Shown: piece by piece, positions 5,721 to 55,850 of the stretch
Layout of the letters: each line of letters starts with the position of its first letter
How positions within the stretch are numbered: position 1 is the stretch's first letter
NCBI RefSeq assembly: GCF_002113885.1
Contig: NW_018408770.1
Location: 536,115-600,114 of the forward strand
Source: Mizuhopecten yessoensis
Lineage: Eukaryota
Length of the DNA stretch: 64,000 nucleotides
Reading direction: 5' to 3'
The notes under the pieces: generated by a model
Told to the model about the DNA's origin: nothing
The model's database searches: none
Seen by the model: the letters and a program-made list of their open reading frames with translations, nothing else
Translations under genes and position numbers: made by a program

Positions 5721-6434
5721 TAATTACAAATAATAGAAAATATCACTGTACATTAGTTCAAACTCACAAAATGCTGCCAAGTTAAACCCCCATCCGCTCA
5801 ATCGGGCAGACCGGGCAACCCTCTCCAACCATAATCATCAATACTGATAGAGGACTATAGAATGATTATAAACAGTAGATAAGGACATTTGTATTTAAAG
5901 GGAACAACTCATGTTTTTGTTAACAAAGTCCTTCACTCAATTGTGAGACTGCTTATTGCTTAAATTATAATGTTAAGCATTAAAATTGTCAATTAGTGAA
6001 TTATTCATTACCACATCAGTTATTTTCAATATGAAATCATAAATCTCAGTCTCACAAGCCTACAGTCTCCCTTTTCGGACTCCAAAATTCGCTTAAAGGT
6101 TGCATGATTACAGTTTAGAAAAGTTATATGGTAATCTTAGGCCATTCCCTTGGTCTTGCACTTTTTGAGTTTTGTTTTGGCAGACTTTTCTTAAAATTAC
6201 TTCAGTTTTAAATCACATTAATTTGTTACTATTTCCTTGTTTATATTATCGGTAACACTTAAAACAACTCGTTCAAACTGTGAATTCAATTGGTTAATTT
6301 CTAAACAGTATTGTGTTTCCTTTGAAATTTTCGCGGAATATTACCTTTCATTTTCCTAAGGTAAACCATTGCCACGTTCCGCATGAAAGCGGAATGTTTA
6401 CAAGCGTTTAGTTGACCTTATTTAATGTCTTCAA

Positions 6435-6471
6435 TGCGCATGCGCGCTATATCAAAATAAATCGCCATTTT
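6435..6471 (+). promoter_or_regulatory. FCHO promoter motifs: NRF1-like TGCGCATGCGCG and YY1-like CGCCATTTT
   Basis: motifs 35-70 nt upstream of the ATG in a locally CpG-richer stretch, typical of housekeeping promoters. Confidence 0.6.
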
Positions 6472-6505
6472 CTGTATCTCTCCAGATGATTTTAATAAGT
6501 CCAGG

Positions 6506-6532
6506 ATGACATCATTTGCAGATCACTTCTGG
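6506..6532 (+). CDS. FCHO2: FCHO exon 1 (MTSFADHFW)
   Basis: ATG at 6506, donor GTATGA; joins GEKNNGF to give the conserved FWGEKN start. Confidence 0.9.
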
Positions 6533-21500: not shown

Positions 21501-24500
21501 ACAGCCTGCATAAACCAGTCAGCATCACTCGTGTAGCATCAGACGTGGTGGGCATGTTCAAATAGGAAAAGTTACAATAAATTTTACGATCGTTCTTACC
21601 AACTGACGATAAATTTTACGATCGTTCATACCAATTCATTATAAGACAGAGTGTTTCATTTTTTCACTTAATTTAAGATAACCATACAGCTTTTCATTCT
21701 TTTTTGTTTGGAATTTTCTATCGTAATTAAAATGTATTGTAATACAGATGTAGGTGAAATTTCCATATGAAATATTTTGTCGTAGATTGCCTTAAGTAGG
21801 TATTCAGTGTTCTGTTGTCGTTAACACTAATTGTAACATTATGTAAGTATGGTTGCACTTGTTCTGCTGCTGTAGCAGACATCATTTACTACAGAAGAAT
21901 GCTGAATAAAGGATGTTGGTTGTAAAAGATGTAGAATAAACAATATTTGTGTATTAATAATATGTGAAAGATTGGTAAAACTGAGAGTTAAGACGATATA
22001 GAAATTTACAAATACAGATACTAGTTTCTTTGAGAGCAAATGGTGTGAGAAATTCCAATCAAGTGAGTAACAGAATTGACATGCTTTTTTCCCTGATTGT
22101 CTTCTCCTTCCAGACTCCAGTGGGAGTCCCAGTCCGGTCTTGTCCGACCAACCGGGTCCTCTCAGTCGCAGTGTAAAGCTCCGCGTGTCCAGGACATGTA
22201 ATGATTTCCTCTGTTTTGTTGTGGGTTTGATGTGTGCGCTGTGTCTGTCCAGCCGTCTGTATTGTACAGTAGCCCCCAGTTGACAGCGTTTAATAAGTAG
22301 TTTTCATTAATTTGCTGGTGCTGTAACATGTAGTCTGCATGATCTAACTCAACTCGGCATAGGTGATCACCCATGTACGTAGGATCTGCTGCGTTGGAGG
22401 GTGGGACCTAGTGGTCAGGAACACCCTAGCATGATCAAGGGAATAGTGTTGGAGGGTGGGACCTAGTGGTCAGGAACACCCTAGCTTGATCAAGGGAATA
22501 GTGCTACAGATCACAGCGCTTGTATTTATGTGCACTTTTAATTAATTTGCAAACAAAATGGAAACAATCCATTATGGGGCAAATTTATATCTGAACAGGA
22601 CTTGCAGCAATGTTAGAAGTATATATTTTTGTAAAGGATGATAGAGATAGCTAATAATGTAATGTGGACAGATCACTGTGTATAGATATCAAATAAAAAT
22701 GCATTGAAAGCATAAGGGTACAGGCTGTATTACTAGACTGGGCAATATCATGACCATAAAACCTATTGCCAGAATTTGGTCTTGGAACTGAATGATCGTT
22801 GTTAGGAATTTTGGTCATGTTAGGGTAAAAAATGTTACAGCAAGAGGGATGCAGATGTCTAAAGATTGATGCAGGTTGTTATGTACTTTGGAGGTATGGG
22901 AATGGTAAAATAGGAATATAAAGGGAAGTGTTGTAAGGGTACCTGGTATATTTTATAATGCAATTAGGTCTGGAAGTAAAGGTTAATAAGGGGATGTTTG
23001 GGTTGAATACTAAATGGCAGGTAGAGGTCGTGGAATAAGAATGCCAGAAATACTTATATTACAAGGTACAAGGAAGCTAGTGCTCTATTATGTTACAGGG
23101 TACAAGGAAACTAGTGCTCTATTATATTACAAGGTACAAGGAAGCTAGTGCTCTATTATGTTACTGGGTACAAGGAAGCTAGTGCTCTATTATGTTACAA
23201 GGTACAAGGAAGCTAGTGCTCTATTATGTTACAAGGTACAAGGAAGCTAGTGCTCTATTATGTTACAGGGTACAAGGAAGCTAGTGCTCTATTATGTTAC
23301 AGGGTACAAGGAAGCTAGTGCTCTATTATGTTACAGGGTACAAGGAAGCTAGTGCTCTATTATGTTACAGGGTACAAGGAAGCTAGTGCTCTATTATGTT
23401 ACAGGGTACAAGGAAGCTAGTGCTCTATTATGTTACAGGGTACAAGGAAGCTAGTGCTCTATTATGTTACAGGGTACAAGGAAGCTAGTGCTCTATTATG
23501 TTACAGGGTACAAGGAAGCTAGTGCTCTATTATGTTACAGGGTACAAGGAAGCTAGTGCTCTATTATGTTACAGGGTACAAGGAAGCTAGTGCTCTATTA
23601 TGTTACAGGGTACAAGGAAGCTAGTGCTCTATTATGTTACAGGGTACAAGGAAGCTAGTGCTCTATTATGTTACAGGGTACAAGGAAGCTAGTGCTCTAT
23701 TATGTTACAGGGTACAAGGAAGCTAGTGCTCTATTATGTTACAGGGTACAAGGAAGCTAGTGCTCTATTATGTTACAGGGTACAAGGAAGCTAGTGCTCT
23801 ATTATGTTACAGGGTACAAGGAAGCTAGTGCTCTATTATGTTACAGGGTACAAGGAAGCTAGTGCTCTATTATGTTACAGGGTACAAGGAAGCTAGTGCT
23901 CTATTATGTTACAGGGTACAAGGAAGCTAGTGCTCTATTATGTTACAGGGTACAAGGAAGCTAGTGCTCTATTATGTTACAGGGTACAAGGAAGCTAGTG
24001 CTCTATTATGTTACAGGGTACAAGGAAGCTAGTGCTCTATTATGTTACAGGGTACAAGGAAGCTAGTGCTCTATTATGTTACAGGGTACAAGGAAGCTAG
24101 TGCTCTATTATGTTACAGGGTACAAGGAAGCTAGTGCTCTATTATGTTACAGGGTACAAGGAAGCTAGTGCTCTAGACAAAACTAGGCAGCCCTATCATA
24201 GATTGGTGTACATGATATAACTGTATTCGACTTAATTAGCACCCAAAGCACTTTACAGATCCCCTCCCCCCAAAAATAAAAAATAAAAATTGGGGGATAT
24301 GGAGGTCGAGGTTGCTATTAAGAAGGCTTCATAAGTGTGAATATTTGTTTAAACAGTCATAGTTTCATTAATGTAGAAAAGGCCACCACCAACGATATAG
24401 AATACCCATTGCTAAAAGATAAAAGCAATATTTCTGATTGAAATCTTAAGTTGAGTGTAAAATCTCTGCTTGTTACCTTCCTACTTGGTACTCTTTTTTT

Positions 24501-27500
24501 CTGATATGTGAAATAGTTTGTTGTTGAAACAAACTGCGTTGAAGATGGAACAAATTTCTAGGATATATGTAGTAGCTAGAAAGGGGAGGGGCACTTGAAG
24601 GGGAGGGGCACTTGAAGGGGAGGGGCACTTGAAGGGGAGGGGCACTACTTACGTGGAATACAGTAAACATGTTAACAGATGAAGCCAGGTTAATACATTA
24701 CCACTATCGAGGGGGCTAGGCAGCGAAAAAACCATTGACCTTTACAAGCAGCTGTTAACAGTTGTATCATGTGTTAACTATAGAGTCAGGTGTGGTTTGG
24801 TGTAAAGTTGAGATCATGCATGACGGTGGAAGGACAAAACATGTGGAATGGGGACAGGATATCCATATCCTCTAGGGAAAGAGTTGTCAACTTATCTTCA
24901 ATAACACATCTACTAATGAGAATTTTGCACTTATTTTTGCATATTTAAGCATGCTTCACAACTTTTTAAGGATTTTTTTGTGTGAGCCTATTGCTTCAGA
25001 TTATCTGGTTTCCTGCCGTAAATGCCATATTATATGGAAGCTTTGCTATTCTAAAAATGTCTTCAAGGAAACGTACATTTGTATTGCTTAGGGTAATAAC
25101 ACTGCTACTCTATCATAAGAGACTAATTTTATTTCAGTCGATTATCTCTTCCTCCTTTCAATTCATCTGTGACACAGCTGTTATTTCTACTCACAAACCT
25201 TACATGGACAGGCTTAGTAGGAACTCTTTTGCTAGTTGTACCTTATAGTATGGTTTTACTTCTGATTATTCTTTTGTCTGGTGAGATAAAACACCATTAC
25301 ATGAAATCATTTGGTATGTTCTTGTTAGTTGTGTCATCATATGTCATCAATGGTCCTGTTTTGACAATTTTGTCATGACATGTTGCTGCTTGTATTGGGG
25401 TCATGTCATCACGTCATCATTGGTCTTCTTGCAGAAAGTTGTGTCGTCATTGTTCTTGTTACTGACAGCCGTATTACCATGTGTGTCATCGTTGGTCTTG
25501 TTGATGACAGTGGTGTTATCGTTGGGTCTTGTTAATGAAAATTGTGTCATGTCATCATTGGTCTTGTTGATGACAGTTGTGTCAACATATATGTCAGCAT
25601 TGGTCTTGTTGATGACAGTTGTGTCAACATATAGGTCATTATTGGTCTTGTTGATGACAGTTGTGTCAACATATAGGTCATTATTGGTCTTGTTGATGAC
25701 AGTTGTGTCAACATATAGGTCATTATTGGTCTTGTTGATGACAGTTGTGTCATTGTTGGGTCTTGTTAATGAAAGTTGTGTCATGTCATCATTGGTCTTG
25801 TTGATGACAGTTGTGTCACCGTTGGTCTTGTTGATGAAAGTTGTGTCACGTCATCATTGATCTTGTTGATGACAGTTGTGTCAGCATATATGTCATCATT
25901 GGTCTTGTTGATGACAGTTGTGTCATCGTTGGTCTTGTTGATGACAGTTGTATCATTATGTCATGGTTGGTCTTGTTGATGACAGTTGTGTCAACATATA
26001 TGTCACCATTGGTCTTGTTGATGACAGTTGTGTCACCGTTGGTCTTGTTGATGAAAGTTGTGTCACGTCATCATTGGTCTTGTTGATGACAGTTGTGTCA
26101 ACATATATGTCACCATTGGTCTTGTTGATGACAGTTGTGTCATCGTTGGTCTTGTTGATGAAAGTTGTGTCATGTCATCATTGATCTTGTTGATGATAGT
26201 TGTGTCAGCATATATGTCATCATTGATCTTGTTGATGACAGTTGTGTCAGCATATATGTCATCATTGGTCTTGTTGGTGACAGTTGTGTCATCGTTGGTC
26301 TTGTTGATGACAGTTGTGTCGTCATGTCATAGTTGGTCTTGTTGATGACAGTTGTGTCAACATATATGTCATCATTGGTCTTGTTAATGACAGTTGTGTC
26401 ATAGTTGGTCTTGTTGATGACAGGTTTTTTGTCATGTGCATCATTGATGGCCTTTTTTCTGCGACTGTGTCATCAAATGTCATTGTTTGCCAATAACACA
26501 TTGTATGTCATAACAATTTAGTTTGTGCTGCACACAATTCTTATAAGGTGAAGAAGGTAATAGAATATACATACACATTCCAAAACTACGTATAACTGTG
26601 ATAGAATATATTTTACTGTAAAGTGTCAGTTAGGGGATGTTTAGAACTAAGTTTACATGTTTCAATAATAGACTATAAGTTACACAGTGTGAACAGTACA
26701 GGAATGAATATTTACTTACCAAGTTGATGAGTCTGTGAACCATCTCACAGTAAGGTGTTGTAATCAACTCTTATCCATTGATAACCTCAGATGGTGAATT
26801 TTCCCTGGTCTTTGGGTTTTCTGATTCAGTCTTCTTATCAGAATTTTGCAAATTGTAGGCTATAATTAGAAATATGAAATTGTACACCCAGGTCATAGTT
26901 AAGTACTGTTAAGTGGCACTGTCATAAAGAATTTTGCAAATTGTAGGCTATAATTAGAAATATGAAATTGTACACCCAGGCCATAGTTAAGTACTGTTAA
27001 GTGGCACTGTCATAAAGGATGGTCTGTTGTATAGACACGTAGACCTGCTATAAGGTTTATAATACCACACTGACAAGTTGATATAGGATAATTAGGTAGC
27101 AGTATCAATGCTGCTGAAGTTTTGCTGTACTGAGTTGGCTTCCAGCATGTGACAAGCATTATGTCTACAGTACCAGTAGTTGTCAGTCCATCACACATTA
27201 TCTGTGGCCGTTTTACGAAAGGTGTTTTTGCTAATGTTGTAAAAGTATTGACACCAACTCCTTCCATTTGTACACATTTACCTAGCACAAGGTTAAAGTG
27301 TTTCCAAACAAGATGACATAGTGCAAGGAAATGAAATATCTGTCAATAGTTGTAACATATTTATAAGTAGTATCCATGAAATGCTTTTTGTTCAGGTGTA
27401 ATGTTGCCTCAGTATCAGAGTATTATTTCAAAGATACCGTTTAAAGGTATGTATATTGGATAATATATGTGAAAGATTAATATTTTACAAATATAAATGA

Positions 27501-33500: not shown

Positions 33501-36500
33501 TGGAGGCTCTACGACTCTCTCCTGTAGCAGTATGTATACAGTTATACTGATCTCCTGTAGCAGTATGTATACAGTTATACTGATCTCCTGTAGCAGTATG
33601 TATACAGTTATACTGGTCTACTGTCATAGCAGTATGTATACAGTTATACTGATCTCCTGTAGCGGTATGTATACAGTTATACTGACCTACTGTCATAACA
33701 ATATGTATACAGTTATACTGATCTACTGTCATAGCAGTATGTATACAGTTATACTAATATACTGTAGCAGTATGTATACAGTTATACTGATCTACTGTCA
33801 TACCAGTATGTATACAGTAATGCTGATCTACTGTCATAACAATATGTATACAGTTATACTGATATACTGTCATAACAGTATGTATAGTTATACTGATCTT
33901 GTATCATAAATCTTATTTACAATGAAGTGTTAGCACTTTAAAATACTTTATACCTACAATTTGAAATAATAATTCACACCTTCTTTCTCCTATTGAAGTC
34001 CTTTTATTTTCAATGTATCTTCGGGTAGTATATCACTACTGGAAAATGCCTTAATGATCAGAATTGTCGTTGTATAGTATATTTTGTTTTTCAATTGCAG
34101 AAAAAGAGAAGTCAAACACCAACAGACAAGAAAATGAAAAGGTCCCAGTCCGAGTCGGATACGCTAGAGTAAGTGAGAGCAATGGTTTAACCAATCTGTA
34201 ATTGCGCATACGAAGGCTTGAACTTATCCTTATAATTTTAATGTGCCATTTAACAAATGAATTTGTTAATATTTGAAAGATGAGATTTGTCCACATTACA
34301 TGATCTTCCAGAAAGTTTATTATGATAATGATAAATTGAGAGAAATTGACGGATTTTATCAATTTATCAAAATTTAGCAAAAGATACTTGTTGTCCAGTG
34401 TGTGATTATTTATAAGTTGATTATGAATTTCCTGTTTCCTTTACAGTTCCCTAAAGCCAGCAGGTCTGGACTTGTTAAATTTAGATTTTTTTGCTTCATC
34501 AAGTGCTTCCACCCCCACTGGTGGGGGCTATAACCTCCCCTCCCCACTCTCCCCTATGGCAGACACCCGACTACACAATAGTGCACTGTCTAGTGCCAGC
34601 ACCACCCCTAACAACAGTGAGTATATCACTACAGCACTTCCTTGTCACGGCACCATGTCCAATTAGCTGGTGGCTTTTTTGTCAAGTCTTTCATTTAACT
34701 ATTTTTCTTTTGTGATTGGTATTTGTATGTGTGCTTAGATTCACTGGACCATGACATAACACTATATAATTATACATTATATATATTTGTAATTTGTAAA
34801 ATATCTTGTTATTTTAATTGATTTGGCATTAACTTAAAGTAGCCATCAACATTTTCTTTCTTCTGTTCATTCCAATACAGTCACAAAGCTTAAGCCTGCA
34901 CCAAAGAGAGTCAGTAAGGAAACATACATTTTTTTGTACAGATTGATATTGTATGACTTTGTGTAGGGGAAGGTATGATGTATGAGGAATAAAATGATGT
35001 GGTGAAGGAGAGCTGTGATGGTTAATATGGAGGAAGTATGATGTGAAGGGGAGGTCTGTTGTATGGTGACTTTATGTAGGGGTGGTATGATTATGGTAAA
35101 TGATATAATGATTTGGTGTAGGGGGAAGTATTATTATGGTAAATGATACGATGACTTGGTGTAGGGTTGTTATGATTATGATAAATGATATAATGACTTG
35201 GTGTAGGGGAGGTATGATTATGGTAAATGATATAATGACTTGGCGTAGGGTTGTTATGATTATGATAAATGATATAATGACTTGACGTAGGGTTGTCATG
35301 GTGTTGTTTGCATGGTGACTTGGTGTAGGGTTGTTATGATACAATGACTTGGTGTAGGGTTGTTATGATACAGTGACTTGGTGTAGGGTTGTCATGGTGA
35401 CCATATAAGTGGGATGACACTATCGAGGTGTTTGGTTAAATTCCTTCCTTGTGTGTGTTTCAGTTCTTAGTTGATATGACTCCTGGCAAAAAAGCATTTG
35501 CACCACTGCTTTAAAAGTACTTAAATTATTTCAGAATGATAATTTAGGAACGGATGGATCTTCTGTGATTAACACATTTTAAAGATGGTTATGCAGAAAG
35601 CACAATGGATTATCATTCAAGCCTAAAAAAACAAAATTGGACATTCATTGTCCCTTGCTACACTCCCGCAAATAGCACCAGATATTTTTTTTATTTTGAT
35701 TGATCTCCTTTTCAAAGTTCTACACTAAACAAATTAAAGTTTTAGGAAATGTGCAAAATACATGTATATGACAAAATTCAAGAATTGTTCATGTCATAAA
35801 TTTTTAGCTATTTCAAAACGAAAGGTTGTATGTTTGTATTACAGATATAAGTGGACTATTCAACAGCAGTTCAGGGAGTGACGGGGTGGCAATAAACCCC
35901 CTCCCCTCCCCATCTAGTCACATAACCTCATCTCCTGGTGGTACGGGCATAAGCCTGCAAGCAGCTGCAATCCCAAGGCCATCATCTCGTAACAAAGGCA
36001 TCATACCTCAGGTACGTACACCGGCATTATCTTGTAACAAAGGCATCATACCTCAGGTACGTACACCGTCATCATCTTGTAACAAAGGCATCATCCCTCA
36101 GGTACATACACTGTCATCGTCTCATAACAAAGGCATCATACCTCACGTACATACACTGTCATCATCTCATAAACTGTCATCATCTCATAACAAAGGCATC
36201 ATCCCTCAGCTACATATACTGTCATCATCCCGTAACAAAGGCATCATACCGCAGGTACATACACTGTCATCATCTCATAAACTGTCATCATCTCATAACA
36301 AAGGCATAATACCTCAGGTACGTACACCGGCATTATCTCGTAACAAAGGCATCATACCTCAGGTACATACACTGTCATCATCTCATAACAAAGGCATCAT
36401 ACCTCAGCTACATATACTGTCATCATCCCGTAACAAAGGCATCATACCTCAGGTACATACACTGTCATCATCTCGTAACAAAGGCATCATACCTCAGGTA

Positions 36501-39500
36501 CATACACTGTCATCATCTCGTAACAAAGGCATCATACCTCAGGTACATACACTGTCATCATCTCGTAACAAAGGCATCATACCTCAGGTACATACACTGT
36601 CATCATCTCGTAACAAAGGCATCATACCTCAGGTACATACACTGTCATCATCTCGTAACAAAGGCATCATACCTCAGGTACATACACTGTCATCATCTCG
36701 TAACAAAGGCATCATACCTCAGGTACATACACTGTCATCATCTCGTAACAAAGGCATCATACCTCAGGTACATACACTGTCATCATCTCGTAACAAAGGC
36801 ATCATACCTCAGGTACATACACTGTCATCATCTCGTAACAAAGGCATCATACCTCAGGTACATACACTGTCATCATCTCGTAACAAAGGCATCATACCTC
36901 AGGTACATACACTGTCATCATCTCGTAACAAAGGCATCATACCTCAGGTACATACACTGTCATCATCTCGTAACAAAGGCATCATACCTCAGGTACATAC
37001 ACTGTCATCATCTCGTAACAAAGGCATCATACCTCAGGTACATACACTGTCATCATCTCGTAACAAAGGCATCATACCTCAGGTACATACACTGTCATCA
37101 TCTCGTAACAAAGGCATCATACCTCAGGTACATACACTGTCATCATCTCGTAACAAAGGCATCATACCTCAGGTACATACACTGTCATCATCTCGTAACA
37201 AAGGCATCATACCTCAGGTACATACACTGTCATCATCTCGTAACAAAGGCATCATACCTCAGGTACATACACTGTCATCATCTCGTAACAAAGGCATCAT
37301 ACCTCAGGTACATACACTGTCATCATCTCGTAACAAAGGCATCATACCTCAGGTACATACACTGTCATCATCTCGTAACAAAGGCATCATACCTCAGGTA
37401 CATACACTGTCATCATCTCGTAACAAAGGCATCATACCTCAGGTACATACACTGTCATCATCTCGTAACAAAGGCATCATACCTCAGGTACATACACTGT
37501 CATCATCTCGTAACAAAGGCATCATACCTCAGGTACATACACTGTCATCATCTCGTAACAAAGGCATCATACCTCAGGTACATACACTGTCATCATCTCG
37601 TAACAAAGGCATCATACCTCAGGTACATACACTGTCATCATCTCGTAACAAAGGCATCATACCTCAGGTACATACACTGTCATCATCTCGTAACAAAGGC
37701 ATCATACCTCAGGTACATACACTGTCATCATCTCGTAACAAAGGCATCATACCTCAGGTACATACACTGTCATCATCTCGTAACAAAGGCATCATACCTC
37801 AGGTACATACACTGTCATCATCTCGTAACAAAGGCATCATACCTCAGGTACATACACTGTCATCATCTCGTAACAAAGGCATCATACCTCAGGTACATAC
37901 ACTGTCATCATCTCGTAACAAAGGCATCATACCTCAGGTACATACACTGTCATCATCTCGTAACAAAGGCATCATACCTCAGGTACATACACTGTCATCA
38001 TCCCGTAACAAAGGCATCATACTTCAGGTATGTACACTGTCATCATCTCGTAACAAAGCTATCATACCTCAGGTACATACACTGTCATCATCTCATAACA
38101 AAGGCATCATACCTCAGGTACATACTCTGTCATCATCTCATAACAAATCATCTCGTAACCAAGGCATCATACCTCAGGTACATACACTGTCTTCATCCCG
38201 TAACAAAGGCATCATACCTCAGGTACATACACTGTCATCATCTCATAACAAAGGCATCATACCTCAGGTACATACACTGTCATCATCCGGTAACAAAGGC
38301 ATCATACCTCAGGTATATACACTGTCATCATCCCGTAACAAAGGCATCATACCTCAGGTACGTACACTGCCATCATCTCGTAACAAAGGCATCATACCTC
38401 AGGAACGTACACTGTCATCATCTCGTAACAAAGGCATCATACCTCAGGTACGTACACCGTCATCATCTCATAACAAATCATCTTGTAATAAAGGCATCAT
38501 ACCTCAGGTACATACACTGTTATCATCTCATAACAAAGGCATCATACCTCAGGTACGTACACTGTCATCATCTCATAACAAATCATCTTGTAACAAAGGC
38601 ATCATACCTCAGGTACGTACACCGTCATCATCTCATAACAAATCATCTTGTAATAAAGGCATCATACCTCAGGTACATACACTGTCATCATCTCATAACA
38701 AATCATCTTGTAACAAAGGCATCATACCTCAGGTACGTACACCGTCATCATCTCATAACAAATCATCTTGTAATAAAGGCATCATAGCTCAGGTACATAC
38801 ACTGTCATCATCTCATAACAAATCATCTTGTAACAAAGGCATCATACCTCAGGTACGTACACTATCATCATCTTGCAACAAAGACATCATACCTCAGGGA
38901 CATACACTGTCATCATCTCGTAACAAAGGCATCATACCTCAGGTACGTACACTGTCATCATCTTGCAACAAAGACATCATACCTCAGGTACATACACTGT
39001 CATCATCTCGTAACAAAGGCATCTTACCTCAGGTATATACACCGTCATCATCTCGTAACAAAGGCATCATACCTCAGGTACATACACTGTCATCATCTCA
39101 TAACAAAGGCATCATACCTCAGGTACGTACACTGTCATCATCTTGTAACAAAGGCATCATACCTCAGGTTCATACACCGTCATCATCTCATAACAAATCA
39201 TCTCATAACAAAGGCATCATACATCAGGTTCATACACTGTCATCATCCCGTAACAAAGGCATCATACCTCAGGTATATACACTGTCATCATCTCATAACA
39301 AAGGCATCATACCTCAGGTACATACACCGTCATCATCTCATAACAAAGCTATCATACCTCAGGTACATACACTGTCATCATCCCGTAACAAAGGCATCAT
39401 ACCTCAGGTACGTACACTGTCATCATCTCATAACAAAGGCATCATACCTCAGGTACGTACACTATTATCCCATAGCGAATGCATATTTGAAATTAGGGTA

Positions 39501-42500
39501 AATGAAATGCGTTTTCATTTAGTCGATCAGAAAAGAAATAATTACAGTGTGATCAAATTTACTTTGATGTATGTTTTCTAGATTCCATCACGGTCCTCGG
39601 GTAGGAACAGTCCCGCCTCCATAATGGGCCGGTCAGATAGTATGACCTTCAGCACGACCTCCATGTTAATTGGGTCATCTCGAGGGCCAAGCCCACTGAC
39701 CATCGGCAAGTCTGACACCGTACCTCTGGCCATTGCTTTCACAGAGAATATCGGTGCCTACTTCAAAGGCACAGATGCCACACAGTAAGGACACTTGTTT
39801 CATACATCTCCTCCAGCGCAGCGTTAGGATTTACAAGTTATTAGGTGTCATAGCCTGTTTCATTGATCAGTTTTCTGGTACTATTTACTTAACATTATCA
39901 GTAATATTGAGACAATCTGTGCTAAAAGTTGGGAAATCCTTGGTCAGAGTTTATACCTAACTCGTTTCTTTGTAAGAGTGTCTAATATAGATGTAAAAAA
40001 TTTCATTTATATTGACCTTGGTGATGTATTATTTACAGGTGCATGGTGAAGGTCATTGGCAATGTCATGATGTCATTTCCTGCTGGTGTCGTCAAAGTGT
40101 TCACAGAAAATCCAGCTCCAGCTGTACTGAGCTTTCAAATCAAAAACTCATCTCGACTTAACAACATCATCCTTAATAAACAGTTAATTGTAGAGTGAGT
40201 ATGTCTTTAAATATAAACTTTTATTCATTTTACACCGATTATGAAACTTGTAATTTCAACTTATATTAATCACTCTTGTTGAACCGGATGTAAGCGCACG
40301 GGGGGTCTTATTGTGGGAGTAAACCAGAGTACCTGCAGAAAAACCCACGTGATTGGGCAGGAGACCCCATACTTTTTCACGTCTGATCAGGGAATTGAAC
40401 CCTGCGGCCTTGGTGAAAGGCAAGTGCTCTATCCACTGCACCACCCGACCACCCCAAGAGTATATCTTTCTTACCTGTATTCACTAATGATGCTCTGATG
40501 TCAGACATTTTCTAACATTGACAAGAATTTTACATTGAATTATTATCTATTTCATAATGTACGGATTATCTTACACATTCAAATCCTGTGTGACTAGATG
40601 TGTATGTAGGAGACTTGGAATGTTATTTGTACTTTCATTATGGCTTCCAGAGAATCACACAATGTAGCCGAGGATTGCATTATCTACACATTCAACATGT
40701 CGGCTCTCACAGACCACCTCCGCAGTCAGGGCGAGGAGAACAAATCAGCATCTTATTTCAATATAGATATACTCAAATACCAGGTGAGTACAGATTTACA
40801 GACATTTCACGTAATTATCCACCGAGAATCTCATAATCCCATGGATTGATCTAATAAATCCTGTATTCTGTGTAGAATTGGAGCTGAACATCAGTTTTGT
40901 ATTATTGCGTCATATTTAGTGGGCCATGCTCACGTTCCCCTGAATCCATCTAACGTCAGCATAATTTATGTCCAAGTAGTTTGTGAACACTAACCTACCT
41001 GGTTATGGATATATATAATAAACTTTTTATGTAGTGTCTTACCAAATTCATGATACTAATTCGGTTATTACAGGGGAAGCCCCAGCCTGGTGTGGAGAGC
41101 TGTCCACTCCCCCTGGTGGTGTACTGGAAATGTGAGGACAAGCACACAGACTTTAGGCTAGACTACAAGTATAACCCCAAGTCCATGTCCTCACCCTGTG
41201 CTTTAAAAAACATCACGGCCACAGTGGTGGTCAACGGTGGTGTAGAGAGCATGCAGAGCATCCCTAGTGGCAATTGGTAAGTCGACTCTTAGTCATTTTG
41301 GCTTTGTCAACTATTGGGTTGCCAAAACAGGACTAACATATTTTTCTTCGTATTTATAACCGTAATTATCTGAAATTTAATATTTCATGTTTAACGTTGC
41401 CAAGGGTGGTTACCAATGACACTGTACACCATTACATTCTTGAATGATTAAGACGATACTCACTCTGACGTAGTAGATGCATATTATAACGACTCTAAAT
41501 ATATCAATGTTATTTTGACACATACTAGGTATGTATAACTGTCAAACCATCTCCATTAAAATCACTTGTGTTAACAGATCACTTTTTCTTGTTTCCCATT
41601 GTAGTGATTTCTTTATGAACTGATTTCGAGAAGTGTATCAAGAAACCTCCTGTGTTACAAGACCTTTTTTTAACTTTCCATGGGTGATTTCTTAAGGATC
41701 CCTGGCCACTGCCAAACATGTTATGTCTGAGTGTAAAAATGGCAATGGGGCCAGACTAGGATTCAAACCCAGAACTTCCAATCATCCGTTATAACATCCG
41801 TTATAACCAATCAAATCATCCGTTATAACCAATCAAATCATCCGTTATAACCAATCAAATCATCCGTTATAACCAATCATCCGTTATAACCGATCATCGT
41901 ACAATATGTGTCGCTATAACCAGCTAAGCCACTTGGTCAGCAGTAGTGAACTGGACCAGATGTGGTACAAGGTCAATTCAAAAAAATAAACAGAGGGGAG
42001 GTTTCTGTATGTAAGAAAATGACAGTGGAGTTCTCTATTGTTTTGCTGCACTGGACAAGTATCCTTAAAACAGGACAATTGATGTGTAATAGATATTTAT
42101 TATATTGATACATACGATTTATGTATTAAATTGATACATCATATATGTATTATATCAACACATAATAGTTAAGTTGAGGTATATGTACTGTTACAGTACT
42201 TGTTATGTTGTCAAGAAGTGTTTAACAAACTTCATTTGCTGACAGGAATGAGGAAAATCAGCGTGCCACTTGGAAATTAAATGACTTGGCAGAATTGAGT
42301 GAGGAGGGCAGTGCTGGAAGTATACGAGCCAAATTTAACCTCAAGTCAGGGCCCTCCAAACCGTCAACAACAGCAATGACTTTTATATCGGAGGGGGCCT
42401 CACTAACAGGGATAGACTTTGAGCTAGTGGGAACAGGTTACCGGATATCTCTGTCAAAGAAACGCTTTGCTGCAGGTAGGGCTTCCTAACTCACATTTAA

Positions 42501-48620: not shown

Positions 48621-51229
48621 AGGAACATATCCTAACTAGGAGGTACCTCTTTTCCAAAAAGAATGGTCTAAGTTAAACATTGCATGGATAGTGGAAAGGG
48701 GTTATCATTAGTCTGAAGGAAAGCATTGGTGAAAATCAGTCTGAATATAAGCACTGGTGGCAACGAGTCTGAATACAAGCTTGACACAGGAATCCGGCCC
48801 TATCAATGAAAATTTGGGTCATACCACTAACATGGAAACAGCTGAGATGTCGACCCATTACCATATTACATTACACATACTCATATGCTACCATGATTGC
48901 CACTAGGGTCTTGCCTGCCACAGGGGACTTAAGTGTCACATGAAAACTGTTCAGATCCTCACCCTATAACTATATAGCTGCTTGCTGGCAATTCAATCGG
49001 TCATGCTAGCTGGATTACCGCTAGTGCCTGGCACCAATATTGGGGACTTAGTTATATTGTCATAATATAGAAATTCTTATCCTATATAACATAACACATA
49101 TATATATCTCAAATAAATGTGCTATGAAGCATCATTGGTCCTTGGACCTGAGATCATTTGTAAAGGAAGAGTGCAGCTCCCCATTGGAATGCAGGTGATG
49201 ATACAGGCTCTATAGGCCTCTTGTAACCATGAAAAATCATACTTTTACCACTCGTGCCAAAAATCTAAACTGTTACTGCTGCATTCGCAATGTGGAGGAG
49301 TTTTATCCAGGAAGTATGCTAAATTTCAGAAGGATGTATAGAGTGTGTGAATGTGAAAGTTTTTTTTTTAATTCTTTATGGATAAATTGCTGGAAACGGA
49401 CAACTCATTCGGTGCACTGTCCGACTCAAATAATGAATCATAAATCGGTAGTTTTAAACACAGCAGATATTTTGTCAGCAAACTACGAAATAGTGATAGA
49501 CACATGATAGTCTCAATATTGACCTCGTATAGGACACGCCTGGAGATAATCGAGGTTTACAAACTTCCGGATCAGTTTGATACAAAAATTGGTGTCATGG
49601 GGTTATTTCAGTCTTCCTTGCCAGCCAGGCACGGCACGAGTTAGCTCGGGCCTCTTAAGCTCAAAATGAAAAGTTATTTTGGGAATTAATACACAGGCGA
49701 ATCCAGCATTTTTTCACGACGCTCAACCTCGAATGTGTGCACGATCAACGCACCTCCCTCCCCTACATACGAAAGCCGATTCGTTATACTTAGTAATAAA
49801 ATGACTCGTGTCGACGCAGCTCGTTCGGCTTTCGTACCTACACATACACACATACCTTTAGGTGGTTGAGATTATTGAGCCCCCATCCGTAATGCCAAAT
49901 ACTTTCTCAAAAACGCTAAATTCATGATGATTCCCGACCCATCACCAAATGGAACCCAGGCCACTAACTTGAATACTATTTGTAAAAGGAAATCCTCTTG
50001 TATAGCTCTGTTGGATAGGCGTGGAAAGATCGCGGTATATATCAACGTGTGGTTGATGTACCCAACCGGCTTACCATACAATTACTACATTTTTATTTGT
50101 CGTCAACATAAATAGCCCGAGCTTCAATAGACGAAATGGGTTAACATTTCATATCATTATGCCCTGTACAGTTCATAGGTGGTCTCCGACTCATAGTGTT
50201 AAAAGGAAAATTGTACCAATGCATTCCATATAAAAAGTCAAAAAGTCATTGATCGACAAAGCTCCATACCGTCAACTGGGACACGAGTAATTTAGCATTT
50301 TTATTTTAAAACCTATATAGGCCTACCGCTGTACGAAGGAGAAAGTTAAGAGCGGTTGACCTTTTGAACCTGAAAAAATGGTATACCTTTGAAGTTTTGA
50401 AGTCACAAGGGTAGCCGTGCAGATTCATGGTTACCTACATTTAGTGGTTATGCAGAGGTACCAAATATCCTGGGTCACTGTAAACTACGCTATTGTTTAC
50501 TTCATATATCATCGTCTGCATACCAAGGTTCCCAATAACTACTGCATGGCATACTGATAACATCTTTAGATTTGTTTCTACTGATTAAATGTAACGCACT
50601 TAATTGTCAATCGACTCTGCCAATCTATCACAAACGAGGGGTTCGTCACTAGTGTTCTTTGTCCCTTTGTTAGAAGTGACTCGACCTCTGTTCTTGACAA
50701 TGGTTATAATGGACTTAATTTTAGATCGTCTGGCTCAGTGATTTGGTTAAACTCCTAAATATATGTTCCCATTGGTCCATTCCCAATGATCCGTGTACCA
50801 GTACGTCCATCTGATCAGACATGCCGATGTATTGAATAAACCTCTTAAATTTATCAATATTCAACACTCGGGTGATATATTTAACGATACCCCCCTTGTG
50901 GAAATGGTACGCCTGTATAACACGGCCCACTATCAGCCGTTCATATCTCCCAAGCACACTGACAAATATGCGGATCGGGATTATATACAGTGACAAATCA
51001 CCGAATACGGACACTTATGAACCCGTTTTATAACGTCTCACTACTACTACGGTTTTTGCATTTTCCTCTCGACAATCACATGTATACGTTGCTGAAAGAT
51101 CTTGTGGTATAAATAACGTGAATTAAGGAAGCAGTTTGCCACTGTGTCAGACACCGAAATATACAGATCCAGAGGTAATATCTTTTTACTGAAATGAAAT
51201 ACGGAAGATGCTGCTGAATTATTGTTAAA

Positions 51230-53194
51230 ATGATGAAACGACGCTTTACGAAAACATCTCAATCCTACCAGCAAGTTGGACAACATGAGAAGTATGGCAC
51301 CAAAGAAGAAGTCAAGAAGAAAGAAGCCAGCAAACAGAAACATGTGAATCCGTTACGATGTGGCATGTGTTCCGGAACACTACGCAGTCCAAAGTTACTC
51401 CCGTGTTACCATACGTTCTGTTTCAAGTGTCTGGAGGACTACGTGGGGAGAAAGTGTGCCCCCGAGGAGCCGTCATTTCACTGTCCCCTGTGTCTGATGC
51501 AAATTGACATTCCTCAAGATGGCGTCTCTGGATTGACAGACAATTTGTACGTGTTAGTATACGACGCCATGAATGCCTCCAAGAACCCGTGTCAGCAATG
51601 TGAAACTGGAACCGGCGCGGTGGCCAGATGTGTCGACTGTGATGAAAATATTTGTATGTCATGTAAAAACGTCCACCAGAAAATGAAAGCTACCAAAAAC
51701 CACAAACTCGTTCTCTTGGCGGAGCAAGAAAAGATACTCAACGCGTCCCTTTCGCGACAATGCACGTGTCCGGAACATGCAAACGAGGAAATGTGTTTTG
51801 TCTGTAAACCGTGTAACGCACTTTTGTGTTTGCAATGTAAGGATAGTCACCTTGACCATAAGTTAGAGGATGCGTCTGTCGCCGCCAAGGTAAGGAAAGA
51901 GGAACTGTCGAGATTGGCAGACGGTGTGCGTTCATACTTACCGTATATCAAAAACAACATGGCAAAGGCCGACAAAGAAACGGACAGACTTAAGGAAGAC
52001 GTTGACAAGACAAAGCTACATATTGTAGACACTGCCGAAAAGTTGAAAAGGGAAATCGATGCAGCATGCGCAAAGAAGATAGAGAACATTGATGCAACTC
52101 TAAAACAGTATTTGTCATCTATCGAAAGATTCCGTGCGGAAATGGAGCGCGTTTACCTTTCTATAAAGACTCTCGCCGTTATGTCGGACCAAATATTCGA
52201 TCTGGCTCCTGACGGACTGTTACTGCAAACAAATCGCAACATCAGTAAGCGTCTGGAGTCTGTTCCTACCGAGATACCAGCATGTTCTTTAGAAAGCGCC
52301 AAAACGAGTTTTGAGCCGAAATCCGTACCCGAGGAAGACTTATTGGGTGTCACGTCTGTGTCCGTGTTGCCTATCCTCAGGTTTTCCCCGACAGACACTA
52401 AAGTGCCGACATTTTACTGCCCAGGTCGACCCTACTCCATATGCCCAGTGTCCGATGACGAGGCATGGGTTATTTGTGACACCTCGGAGACCATTCAGCT
52501 TTATTCCAAGAACGGGGCAATCCGACAGTTTCTCAAATTACCAGGGGAGGCCAATGACATTTGTTGTTTTCCAAACGGTAGTCTCTTTGTCACAGAACTT
52601 CGAGGACGTGCCATCTGGAAAATTGGAACAGACAATTCTGTGAAAACCTTCACTACCATCGACGACACAGTTCGTGGGGTTTGTTATTTTGGCGGGAAGT
52701 TCTATGTCACGTGCAAGGATTCGAGTCGGCACATGTTGTCCATTTTGACGCAAGACACGGGCGACATTGAAAAGGAGATCGTACAAGACAACGGCAACCC
52801 AATTTTTTGTCATCCAGATCGTCTTTCTGTCACGAGTAGCGGTACTGTGTGTGTGACCGACAGGGGCAAAGATGGCGCTGTTGTCTTTGTCACATCAGAC
52901 GGACACGTGAAGTCCTCATACAGGGGAGAAGGAGGAGAGCAAAATGGGGGACAGAAAGAGCGGTTTGAACCCTGGGGACTTTGTGTGGATCAACACGACA
53001 ACATATTCATATCTGACCGCTTCAATGACGTCATCCATGTTCTCAACGAAAATGGTGTTTTCCAGAAGTTCTTGCTGACTGAAGATGACGGGATAAGGCG
53101 CCCCCTGGGCATAGCTGTGGACAATGCCGGACACATTTGGGTCGGCAATGAGGACGGAAGTATCCATGTGTTCGAATACCTAGAGCTTTTATAA
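51230..53194 (+). CDS. intronless tripartite-motif E3 ubiquitin ligase (RING, B-box1, B-box2, coiled coil, NHL-like propeller; TRIM2/3/56/71-like), 654 aa
   Basis: RING CGMC...LPCYHTFCFKC...CPLC; B-box1 CQQC...CVDCDENICMSCKNVH...H; B-box2 CPEH...CKPC...CLQC..H..H; helical heptad region; NHL motifs FEPWGLCVDQHDNIFISD and PLGIAVDNAGHIWVG. Confidence 0.95.
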   Translation: MMKRRFTKTSQSYQQVGQHEKYGTKEEVKKKEASKQKHVNPLRCGMCSGTLRSPKLLPCYHTFCFKCLEDYVGRKCAPEEPSFHCPLCLMQIDIPQDGVSGLTDNLYVLVYDAMNASKNPCQQCETGTGAVARCVDCDENICMSCKNVHQKMKATKNHKLVLLAEQEKILNASLSRQCTCPEHANEEMCFVCKPCNALLCLQCKDSHLDHKLEDASVAAKVRKEELSRLADGVRSYLPYIKNNMAKADKETDRLKEDVDKTKLHIVDTAEKLKREIDAACAKKIENIDATLKQYLSSIERFRAEMERVYLSIKTLAVMSDQIFDLAPDGLLLQTNRNISKRLESVPTEIPACSLESAKTSFEPKSVPEEDLLGVTSVSVLPILRFSPTDTKVPTFYCPGRPYSICPVSDDEAWVICDTSETIQLYSKNGAIRQFLKLPGEANDICCFPNGSLFVTELRGRAIWKIGTDNSVKTFTTIDDTVRGVCYFGGKFYVTCKDSSRHMLSILTQDTGDIEKEIVQDNGNPIFCHPDRLSVTSSGTVCVTDRGKDGAVVFVTSDGHVKSSYRGEGGEQNGGQKERFEPWGLCVDQHDNIFISDRFNDVIHVLNENGVFQKFLLTEDDGIRRPLGIAVDNAGHIWVGNEDGSIHVFEYLELL

Positions 53195-53219: not shown

Positions 53220-55850
53220 TAACAATAAGTCGGACAAAAAAACCGGATAACAATAGGTTGGGCACAAAAACCGAAGCTAACAGTAATTCGGGCACAGCAA
53301 TGAGAGTAACAATATATCAAGCACAGAAATATAGGTAACAATAGGTCGGACACACAGCTCGGGGGCATAAAACTGGGGTTCAATAGGTCGGGCATAAACT
53401 GTGGTAAACGAAAGGTCGGGCATACAAAACTGTGGATTACACAATAACTCAGGTACAAAACTGAGGGTCACAATAGGTCAGGCAAAAAATTGAGGGTAAC
53501 AATAGGTCGGGCATAACAAACTAAGGATAACAATAGGTCAGTCAGTAAACTAATGGTAACAATAGGTCAGGCATAAACTGAGGGTAAGAATAGGTCGGGT
53601 ACAAAACTAAGGGTAACAATTGGTCAGGCATAAAACTTAGGGTAACAATAGTTCAGGCATAAACAAAGGGTAACAATATATCAGGCATAAAATTAAGGGT
53701 AACAATGGATCAGGCATAAAACTGAGGGTAACAATAGATTAGGCATAATACTGAGAGTAATTATAGGTCAGGCATAAAACTAATGGTAACAATAGGTCAG
53801 GCATATAACTTAGGATAACAAAAGGTCAGACATAATACTGAGTGTAATTATAGATCAGGTACAAAAGGGTAACAATTGGTCAGGCATAAAACTGAGGGTA
53901 ACAATGGATCAGGTATATAACTGAGGATGACAATAGGTGAGGCATAATACTGAGTGTAATTATAGATCAGGCATAAAACTGAGGGAAACATTAGATTAGG
54001 CATAAAACTGAGGGTAACAATAGGTCAGGCATAAAACTAATGGTAACAATAGGTCAGGCATATAACTTAGGATAACAAAAGGTCAGACATAATACTGAGT
54101 GTAATTATAGATCAGGTACAAAAGGGTAACAATAGGTCAGGCATATAACTAAGGATAACAATATATCAGGCATACAATTAAGGGTAACAATATATCTGAC
54201 ATATAATTAAGGGTAACAATAAATCAGGCATATAATTAAGGGGAACAATGGATCAGGCATAATAATGAGTGTAATTATAGATCAGACATAAAACTGAGGG
54301 AAACATTAGATTAGGCATAAAACTGAGGGAAACATTAGATTAGGCATAAAACTGAGGGAAACATTAGATTAGGCATAAAACTGAGGGAAACATTAGATTA
54401 GGCATAAAACTGAGGGAAACATTAGATTAGGCATAAAACTGAGGGTAACAATAGATTAGGCATAATACTGAGTGTATTTATAGATCAGGTACAAAAGGGT
54501 AACAATTGGTCAGGCATAAAACTTAGGGTAACAATAGATTAGGCATAAACAAAGGAAAACAATATATCAGGCATAAAATTAAGGGTAACAATGTATCAGG
54601 TATAAAACTGAGGGTAACAATAGATTAGGCATAATACTGAGAGTAATTATAGGTCAGGCATAAAACTAATGGTAACAATAGGTCAGGCATATAATTAAGG
54701 ATAACAATAGGTGAGGCATAATACTGAGTGTAATGATAGATCGGGCATAAAACTGAGGGTAAGAATAGATCAGGCATAAAACTGAGGGTAATTATAGATC
54801 AGGCATAAAAATGAGGGTAACAATAGATCAGGCATAAAACTGAGGGTAACAATAGGTCAGGCATAACACTTAGAGTAATAATAGGTCAGGCATAAAACTA
54901 ATGGTAAAGGCATATAACTAAGGATAACAATAGGTCAGGCATAAAATTGAGGGTAACAATAGGTCAGGCATAAAACTGAGGGTAACAATAGATCAGGCAT
55001 AATACTAAGTGTAATTATAGGTCAGGCATAAAACTAATGGTAACAATAGGTCAGGCATATAACTAAGGATAACAGTAAGTCAGTCATAAAACTGAGGGTA
55101 ACAATAGGTCAGGCATAAAACTAAGGGTAACAATAGATCAGGCATACAATTAAGGGTAACAATTTATCAGGCATATAATTAAGGGTAACAATGGATCAGG
55201 CATAATACTGAGTGTAATTATAGATCAGGCATAAAACTAATGGTAACAATAGATCAAGCATAAAACTGAGGGTAACAATAGATCAGGCATAAAACTGAAA
55301 GTAATTATAGGTCAGGCATATGACTAAGGATAACAATAGGTAAGGCATAAAACTGAGGGTAACAATAGGTCAGGCATGAAACTAATGGTAACAATAGGTC
55401 AGGCATATAACTAAGGATAACAGTAAGTCAGTCATAAAACTGAGGCTAACAATAGGTCAGGCGTAAAACTAAGGGTTACAATAGGTTAGGCATAAAACTT
55501 AAGGTAATAATAGGTCAGGCATAAAACTAAGGGTAACAAAGGGTCAGGCATAAACTGAGGGTAAGAATAGGTCAGGTACAAAACTAAGGGTAACAATAGA
55601 TCAGGCATTAAACTTAGGGTAACAATAGATCAGGCATAAACAAAGGGTAACAATATATCAGGCATACAATTAAGGGTAACAATATATCAGGCATATAATT
55701 AAGGGTAACAATGGATCAGGTATAATACTGAGTGTAATTATAGATCAGGCATACAACTAATGGTAACAATAGATCAGGCATAAAACTGAGGGTAACAATA
55801 GATCAGGCATAAAACTGAGAGTAATTATAGGTCAGGCATAAAACTAATGA
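53220..55850 (+). repeat. ~30-bp diverged satellite, 2.6 kb, starting ~25 nt after the TRIM-NHL stop
   Basis: GGGTAACAATAGGTCAGGCATAAAACTGAG consensus. Confidence 0.97.

What the first reader, a model, noticed from the sequence alone, without database searches (positions are those of the whole stretch)
35845..39581. An FCHO exon end plus its 5' splice site amplified ~74 times in frame: a potential ladder of alternative donors
Seen: the 45-bp unit is the last 33 nt of coding exon 19 ([11 protein letters not shown]) plus the first 12 nt of the intron (GTACATACACTG). Almost every unit therefore has a phase-0 CAG/GT donor compatible with the exon 20 acceptor. The exon frame stays open for 3.5 kb, and the length variants I saw add 15 or 18 nt, preserving frame. 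The first and last donors are GTACGT; the homogeneous core has the weaker GTACAT. Only 129 nt of unique intron remain, and their first in-frame stop is the acceptor TAG itself. Established: this region is the disordered linker between the F-BAR/AP2-activating part and the muHD. Inference: donor choice could add 0 to ~1150 aa of basic, Ser-rich 15-mers to the linker, and retention would give a muHD-less protein. It may equally be a neutral VNTR spliced out from the first donor.
Basis: partly seen in the sequence, partly recalled or inferred. Interest (0 to 1): 0.85.

Follow-up and report, generated by a model that had tools for sequence, protein, structure and literature searches.

The report
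Intronic minisatellite repeating a splice donor
A 3.5-kb tandem repeat in a scallop endocytosis gene (FCHO2-like) copies the end of one exon plus its splice donor about 74 times, but RNA reads and all gene models use only the first donor, so it is an ordinary intronic minisatellite of a kind already known from human genes.

Summary
Window 35980-39463 holds a 45-bp tandem array. Its unit is the last 33 nt of an FCHO2-like exon plus the first 12 nt of the intron. It has 73 copies after the exon's own copy, 69 phase-0 CAG|GT sites, and an open frame from 35808 to 39578.

The proposed ladder of alternative donors is not supported.
- Raw RNA-seq reads from three of the four independent studies laid gave 25 reads leaving the exon at 36011 and continuing with the first 30 nt of the next exon (39582). 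The fourth run had only 2 reads on the stretch.
- No other donor was reported, and depth is zero over the array beyond 36127.
- All nine NCBI isoforms of Mizuhopecten yessoensis carry one unit.

The open frame fits neutrality. There are 28 distinct substitution types, P(no stop) is about 0.3, and the synonymous share is 0.32 against 0.27-0.29 expected. The array is absent from the orthologous intron of two other scallops.

Similar donor-spanning arrays occur at another junction of this gene and at two junctions of the Argopecten ortholog. At least two of those three are out of frame.

This is the class described for human F7, IFI6, CBS, LMNB2 and PDGF. The copy number of the 1,574-bp perfect core is unverified.

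The parts
35845..36011 (+). Its last 33 nt are the exon-derived part of the repeat unit.
   Evidence: tblastn of XP_021373429. RNA joint from the upstream exon's end (34615/34616) to 35845, and loose ends at 36011.
36012..36017 (+). Authentic 5' splice site, CAG|GTACGT. It is the only donor seen in use.
   Evidence: 25 reads in runs X19, X23 and X24 end at 36011 and continue with the first 30 nt of exon 20. All nine isoforms read GIIPQ|IPSRSS.
36012..39452 (+). Intronic minisatellite of 73 units (63 x 45 nt, 8 x 60 nt, 2 x 63 nt). Each unit repeats the donor, giving 68 further phase-0 CAG|GT pseudo-donors.
36429..38002 (+). Perfectly homogeneous core: 1,574 bp, 35 copies, no substitution. This points to recent expansion. 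The assembled copy number is unverified.
39453..39581 (+). Unique 3' tail of the intron, with a pyrimidine-rich tract and the acceptor TAG. That TAG is also the first in-frame stop.
39582..39785 (+). Next coding exon (end of the linker, start of the muHD).
   Evidence: 100% tblastn match. Its first 30 nt equal the loose-end consensus of the junction reads.

Best explanation
This is a lineage-specific intronic minisatellite (a probable VNTR) in the Mizuhopecten yessoensis FCHO2-like gene. It arose by tandem duplication of a 45-bp segment that happened to span the exon/intron junction, and it expanded by slippage or unequal exchange, recently in the core.

The whole array is removed as part of one 3,570-nt intron (36012-39581), because the spliceosome uses the most upstream donor. 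The 68 downstream copies are silent pseudo-donors. The open frame is a by-product of a stop-free unit whose length is a multiple of three.

Shown here: the structure, use of the first donor, and absence of the array from two other scallop genera. Inferred: why the first site wins (5'-to-3' commitment or exon definition, as shown experimentally for human F7), and that the array is neutral.
For: - RNA reads. 4, 6 and 15 raw reads (runs X19, X23, X24, three studies) leave the exon at 36011 and continue with a 30-nt consensus that equals window 39582-39611. No loose end was reported at any other donor. Depth is 0 in every bin from 36128 to 36545, which includes two core-type units, and no read ran over the stretch's end.
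- Gene models. All nine M. yessoensis isoforms and the Ylistrum and Argopecten orthologues contain exactly one unit.
- Other proteins. No protein of 47-149 aa or 690-2200 aa in the 5.8-billion-protein set carries the repeat peptide.
- Lineage. The orthologous intron is about 236 nt in Argopecten irradians and 377 nt in Ylistrum balloti, with no array.
- Neutrality. There are 28 distinct substitution types, 9 synonymous and 19 not (0.32 against 0.27-0.29 expected). P(no stop) is 0.28-0.36. The GT positions vary as much as the others: 4 units lost GT.
- Background. There are 12 minisatellites inside this 35-kb gene. Donor-spanning arrays also occur at window 33518-33899 (frame closed after 6 codons), at Argopecten L001:34448-36741 (43 bp x 51, not a multiple of 3, immediate TGA) and at L001:6052-8248 (64 bp x 34, frame not read).
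- Precedent. Human F7, LMNB2 and PDGF use only the first donor of such arrays (PMC1557585).
Against: - Coverage is thin: 65 reads in all, from four libraries of unknown tissue. A minor isoform below roughly 10% of junctions, or one specific to a tissue, would be missed.
- In X24, one strand class shows depth 1.36 in bin 36056-36127 and an excess in 36012-36055. So a few reads enter the first one to three units. These may be pre-mRNA or use of donor 2 or 3 (36056, 36101).
- Transcripts from in-frame internal donors would escape NMD. This makes the negative result stronger, but it does not rule out rare use.
- Only the donor side was laid. Donors in the diverged 3' third of the array were not tested directly.
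- Both kinds of indel variant (+15 and +18 nt) keep the frame. They trace to about two events, so chance is about 1 in 9, and probably more given the TCA-TCA-TCT microhomology.
Confidence: 0.8

Rival explanations
1. Functional ladder. Many of the in-frame donors are used, so linker length varies by multiples of 15 aa up to about 1150 aa. Intron retention would give a protein without the muHD.
For: The structure permits it. There are 69 phase-0 CAG|GT sites. Thirteen have the same hexamer as the authentic site, and the frame is open to the acceptor.
Against: - No array coverage and no internal-donor loose ends in four RNA libraries, against 25 canonical junction reads.
- No annotated or database protein carries extra units.
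- No purifying selection on the frame, the peptide or the GT.
- The array is absent in related scallops.
- At least two of the three sibling donor-spanning arrays are out of frame.
- A retained intron would place a stop upstream of five or more exon junctions. That makes it a likely NMD target, which is inference.
Confidence: 0.04
2. IFI6/CBS-like minor use. Besides the authentic donor, only the next one or two pseudo-donors (36056, 36101) are used at low level, adding 15 or 30 aa.
For: - A few X24 reads extend into 36012-36127, while nothing lies further into the intron or in the upstream intron.
- Donor 2 matches donor 1 over the 9-mer and nearly so over 30 nt either side.
- There is human precedent: in IFI6 and CBS the first two pseudo-sites are used (PMC1557585).
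Against: - Fewer than 3 reads at any such site in every run, so no loose-end row appeared.
- These reads can equally be unspliced pre-mRNA.
- No isoform with +15 or +30 aa is in the 90% cluster of nine members.
Confidence: 0.12
3. Assembly inflation. The array is real, but the 35 identical core copies are a gap-filling or assembler estimate, so the true allele may be much shorter or longer. This concerns size, not nature, and is compatible with the best explanation.
For: - The 1,574-bp run has zero substitutions and is flanked by diverged units.
- The genome has 82,659 contigs. From memory, not checked here, the 2017 reference was built from Illumina reads only, and those cannot span such a run.
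Against: - The window has no N.
- A comparable 43-bp x 51 array stands in the chromosome-scale Argopecten assembly, so arrays of this size do exist in scallops.
Confidence: 0.35
4. Recursive (ratchet) splicing. Each unit end, a pyrimidine-rich stretch followed by CAG|GTAC, could act as a zero-length recursive site. The array would then be removed stepwise, leaving the same mRNA.
For: Only the motif: joining the exon's CAG to a downstream unit regenerates CAG|GTAC.
Against: - The intron is short (3.6 kb).
- The tract before each AG is a poor polypyrimidine tract.
- No data bear on splicing intermediates.
Confidence: 0.02

Closest known systems
Human F7 intron 7 minisatellite (37 bp x 5-9), Borensztajn et al. 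2006, PMC1557585
   Same: The first monomer spans the exon/intron boundary, so the authentic donor is followed by identical pseudo-donors. Only the most upstream site is used under normal conditions.
   Different: - F7 has 4 exon nt plus 33 intron nt, up to 9 copies, and a unit that is not a multiple of 3.
- Here there are 33 exon nt plus 12 intron nt, about 74 copies, and the unit is in frame.
- The scanning mechanism was shown by mutagenesis in F7 and is only inferred here.
Human IFI6 (6-16) intron 2 and CBS intron 13 minisatellites (as summarised in PMC1557585)
   Same: Junction-spanning arrays with many pseudo-donors (25 in IFI6, 15-20 repeats in CBS). They set the precedent for limited use of the first two pseudo-sites.
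   Different: In those genes the extra donors are used constitutively. Here no use was detected at the available depth.
Human LMNB2 (100 bp x 10-15) and PDGF intron 4 (81 bp x 16-18) minisatellites (PMC1557585)
   Same: Donor-reiterating arrays in which only the authentic donor is used.
   Different: Fewer copies and a different host lineage.
Sibling arrays in scallop FCHO2-like genes: window 33518-33899, Argopecten irradians L001:34448-36741 and L001:6052-8248
   Same: Same gene family and same architecture: an exon end plus donor, or the donor with 3-4 exon nt, repeated 6-51 times. The first donor is used in all models.
   Different: They sit at different junctions with different units (33/36, 43 and 64 bp). 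The first two hit an in-frame stop within a few codons. I did not read the frame of the 64-bp array.

Membership tests
Minisatellite whose first monomer spans an exon-intron boundary (F7 IVS7 type pseudo-donor array) | Head-to-tail array of units of about 10-100 bp | tested here: met
   45-bp period, 73 units plus the exon copy, 87-93% matches
Minisatellite whose first monomer spans an exon-intron boundary (F7 IVS7 type pseudo-donor array) | The first monomer contains the authentic donor, so the 5' splice site sequence recurs in the intron | tested here: met
   Exon end fixed by the protein match and by RNA reads at 36011. There are 69 phase-0 CAG|GT sites, 13 with the identical hexamer.
Minisatellite whose first monomer spans an exon-intron boundary (F7 IVS7 type pseudo-donor array) | mRNA uses the most upstream donor, or at most the next one or two | tested here: met
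   25 junction reads at 36011 and none reported elsewhere. All nine isoforms carry one unit. Depth is low.
Minisatellite whose first monomer spans an exon-intron boundary (F7 IVS7 type pseudo-donor array) | Copy number varies among individuals (VNTR) | not tested
   No second assembly or long reads of this species could be reached. The reads tool refuses the repeat.
Minisatellite whose first monomer spans an exon-intron boundary (F7 IVS7 type pseudo-donor array) | Pseudo-donors are functional when the first site is disabled | not testable with these tools
   Needs a minigene experiment.
In-frame alternative 5' splice-site ladder / coding repeat | Junction reads or transcripts from internal donors | tested here: not met
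   No loose ends other than at 36011 and no array coverage beyond 36127. No proteins with extra units.
In-frame alternative 5' splice-site ladder / coding repeat | Selection keeps the frame, the peptide and the GT | tested here: not met
   Synonymous share 0.32 against 0.27-0.29 expected. P(no stop) 0.28-0.36. Four units lost GT, about the average rate per position.
FCHO / muniscin gene (host gene) | N-terminal F-BAR, a disordered linker and a C-terminal mu-homology domain | tested here: met
   Exons match F-BAR domain only protein 2-like of M. yessoensis. Pfam muHD hits on three downstream exons. The full proteins carry PF00611, PF22699 and PF10291.

The most novel reading that the evidence does not exclude
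A minority of transcripts, perhaps only in some tissues or only from some alleles, use in-frame downstream donors, most plausibly 36056 and 36101. This would insert 15-aa Ser-rich basic modules just before the muHD of FCHO without triggering NMD. Array length would then become a heritable dial on linker length or on splicing efficiency.
Probability: 0.1. Interest if true: 0.45.

Novelty: new member of a known kind. Interest (0 to 1): 0.27.

Why it matters
As it stands, this is an ordinary intronic minisatellite with no detected effect on the protein.

Its value is as a natural experiment on 5' splice-site choice outside mammals. Sixty-eight extra in-frame donors, twelve of them with the same hexamer as the real one, lie between the authentic donor and a single acceptor, yet the first is chosen. 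That mirrors the human F7 model.

Four donor-spanning arrays in the FCHO2-like genes of two scallops hint that such arrays form readily in these minisatellite-rich genomes. This is also useful to annotators, because open frames through such arrays should not be taken for coding sequence.

Tried and rejected
On the tool's advice I laid the donor-side part 34400-36545.
- The share of sampled words held by possible RNA runs is 0.20-0.30, and 0.23 for X5, the one on record as RNA. That is a little above the 16% of distinct words that are exonic. Most of those runs may be DNA, so I drew nothing from it.
- Exact look-ups of four M. yessoensis isoforms found no contig (also P0002), so no second assembly could be compared.
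- A search with the exon plus two units for short proteins found nothing.
- A search of the species' own genome for the unit found it only at this locus. The exceptions are two 69-70% matches, which are an unrelated 22-bp satellite on contig C5166.
- The search of earlier findings returned nothing near this place.
- I could not retrieve the genome paper to confirm the sequencing technology.
Exons were searched by reference only.
- Rejected: the open frame as evidence of coding. A second frame is also open for 825 codons, and the neutral expectation fits.
Full report
**What is there**

The window is a scaffold piece of the Yesso scallop genome (G000:C5443, 988 Mb in 82,659 contigs). Its + strand carries an F-BAR domain only protein 2-like gene.
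- Exon blocks from 7950 to 43204 match XP_021373429 at about 100%.
- The downstream exons hit Pfam muHD.

TRF reports a 45-bp array at 35980-39463. Read in the exon frame, the exon 35845-36011 ends ...[10 protein letters not shown], followed by CAG|GTACGT. After it come 73 units: 63 of 45 nt, 8 of 60 nt and 2 of 63 nt. Each is made of about 12 intron-derived and 33 exon-derived letters.

The frame is open from 35808 to 39578, and the first stop is the acceptor TAG. There are 69 phase-0 CAG|GT sites. Thirteen are GTACGT, including the first two and the last two, and 50 are GTACAT.

Three qualifications apply.
- A second + frame is also open for 825 codons.
- The core 36429-38002 is a perfect 1,574-bp run whose copy number I could not verify.

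**Is the ladder used?**

Four raw-read RNA-seq runs of 2026 from four studies were laid on 34400-36545. That stretch holds the upstream exon, this exon, nine diverged units and two core-type units.
- As a control, the joint from the upstream exon's end (34615/34616) to 35845 was seen with GT..AG ends.
- At 36011, three runs showed 4, 6 and 15 reads whose remaining letters have a 30-nt consensus identical to window 39582-39611, the start of the next exon. The fourth run, X22, had only 2 reads on the stretch.
- No loose end was reported at any other unit boundary.
- Depth is zero in all bins from 36128 to 36545, and no read ran over the end of the stretch. So no read made of core units was present.
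- The one exception is X24. One strand class has depth 1.36 in 36056-36127 and an excess in 36012-36055. That is a few reads, below the reporting threshold, and they may be pre-mRNA or use of donor 2 or 3.

Transcripts from in-frame internal donors would not be NMD targets (inference). Their absence is therefore unlikely to be due to decay.

Independent support comes from the protein databases.
- All nine NCBI/GenBank proteins of this gene read GIIPQ|IPSRSS with one unit, as do the orthologues.
- Searches with the whole open frame and with the exon plus two units found no protein with repeated units.

**Selection or neutrality?**

Among the 63 standard units there are 28 distinct substitution types (71 cells).
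- Six of the 135 possible single changes to the consensus create a stop in the exon frame. So P(no stop) is 0.28-0.36 for 28 events.
- 9 of the 28 types are synonymous (0.32), against 0.27-0.29 expected without selection.
- Four units have lost the GT, about the average rate per position.
- The +15 and +18 nt variants trace to about two duplication events inside a TCA-TCA-TCT context, so their frame preservation carries little weight.

**Origin**

The orthologous intron is about 236 nt in Argopecten irradians and about 377 nt in Ylistrum balloti, with no array. The array is therefore specific to the Mizuhopecten lineage. The Argopecten/Patinopecten ancestor is dated at about 86 Mya in PMC7090048, and the perfect core points to recent expansion.

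The unit occurs nowhere else in the genome. The only weak hits are an unrelated 22-bp satellite.

The gene is full of minisatellites: 12 arrays covering 9 kb of its 35 kb. Donor-spanning arrays recur.
- Window 33518-33899 repeats the last 12 or so nt of the exon ending at 33529 plus GTATGT. It hits a stop after six codons.
- In A. irradians, a 43-bp x 51 array repeats the end of the ...NKQLIVE exon plus GTGAGT, and the frame hits an immediate TGA.
- Also in A. irradians, a 64-bp x 34 array starts 3-4 nt before another donor. I did not read its frame.
- In all of these the gene models use the first donor. For Argopecten this includes a Logan transcript-derived protein.

An in-frame example among several that are not is what chance would give.

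**Comparison with what is known**

Borensztajn et al. 2006 (PMC1557585) describe exactly this class: minisatellites whose first monomer spans an exon-intron boundary.
- In F7 (37 bp x 5-9), LMNB2 and PDGF, only the authentic donor is used.
- In IFI6 (25 pseudo-sites) and CBS, the first two pseudo-sites are also used.
- For F7 they show by mutagenesis that the pseudo-sites are functional but are pre-empted by a 5'-to-3' oriented selection of the most upstream site.

The scallop array fits the class on every feature I could test. It differs in scale (about 74 copies), in carrying 33 exon letters, and in being in frame. The mechanism is inferred by analogy, not shown.

**Verdict**

This is a real, correctly described structure: a new and unusually large member of a known kind. 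The functional ladder is not supported at present depth. Residual possibilities are low-level use of the next one or two donors (about 0.1) and a mis-sized core in the assembly. From memory, not verified here, the reference was assembled from short reads only.

Noticed in passing
window 33518-33899: A second donor-spanning minisatellite in the same gene. It has a 33/36-bp unit in about 10.8 copies. The first copy is the last 12 or so nt of the exon ending at 33529 plus the intron start GTATGTATACAG. GCA|GTATGT occurs six times exactly, and an in-frame stop comes after six codons. Gene models use the first donor.
   Followed up: partly
L001 (Argopecten irradians FCHO2-like) 34448-36741 and 6052-8248: There are two donor-spanning arrays in the orthologous gene of another scallop. 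One is 43 bp x 51 and repeats the end of the ...NKQLIVE exon plus GTGAGT, out of frame. The other is 64 bp x 34 and starts 3-4 nt before the donor AAA|GTAAGT. M. yessoensis has no array at the first of these junctions (window 40195).
   Followed up: partly
window 7950-43204; L001; L002: 4 of 30 minisatellites in three orthologous scallop genes start at a donor. My rough estimate expects about 0.9 if the founding segments fell at random (Poisson P about 0.01). This is post hoc and the numbers are small. It may be a preference for array birth at 5' splice sites, or it may be chance.
   Followed up: partly
window 18178-19343, 20770-21208, 23054-24175, 25549-26448, 35067-35396: Further intronic minisatellites with 53, 34, 34, 42/107 and 42/29-bp units. 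Several units contain donor-like AG|GTA motifs. About a quarter of the gene's length is tandem repeat.
   Followed up: no
window 34616-35844: Isoform X2 has 12 extra residues ([11 protein letters not shown]...) between the exons at 34448-34615 and 35845. The RNA reads laid here mostly join those two exons directly, so an alternative micro-exon probably lies in this intron.
   Followed up: no
window 51218-53191 (+): A single 658-codon open frame encodes a TRIM-NHL type protein (RING, B-box, coiled coil, NHL repeats). It appears to be intronless and lies downstream of the FCHO2-like gene.
   Followed up: no
window 53364-55845: A 29-bp x 86 tandem array lies just downstream of the TRIM-NHL open frame.
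   Followed up: no
L011 = G000:C5166:1749500-1756000: A 22-bp satellite (about 249 copies, with a 66-bp higher order). Its unit resembles the exon-derived part of the 45-bp unit at about 70%. This is probably chance.
   Followed up: partly
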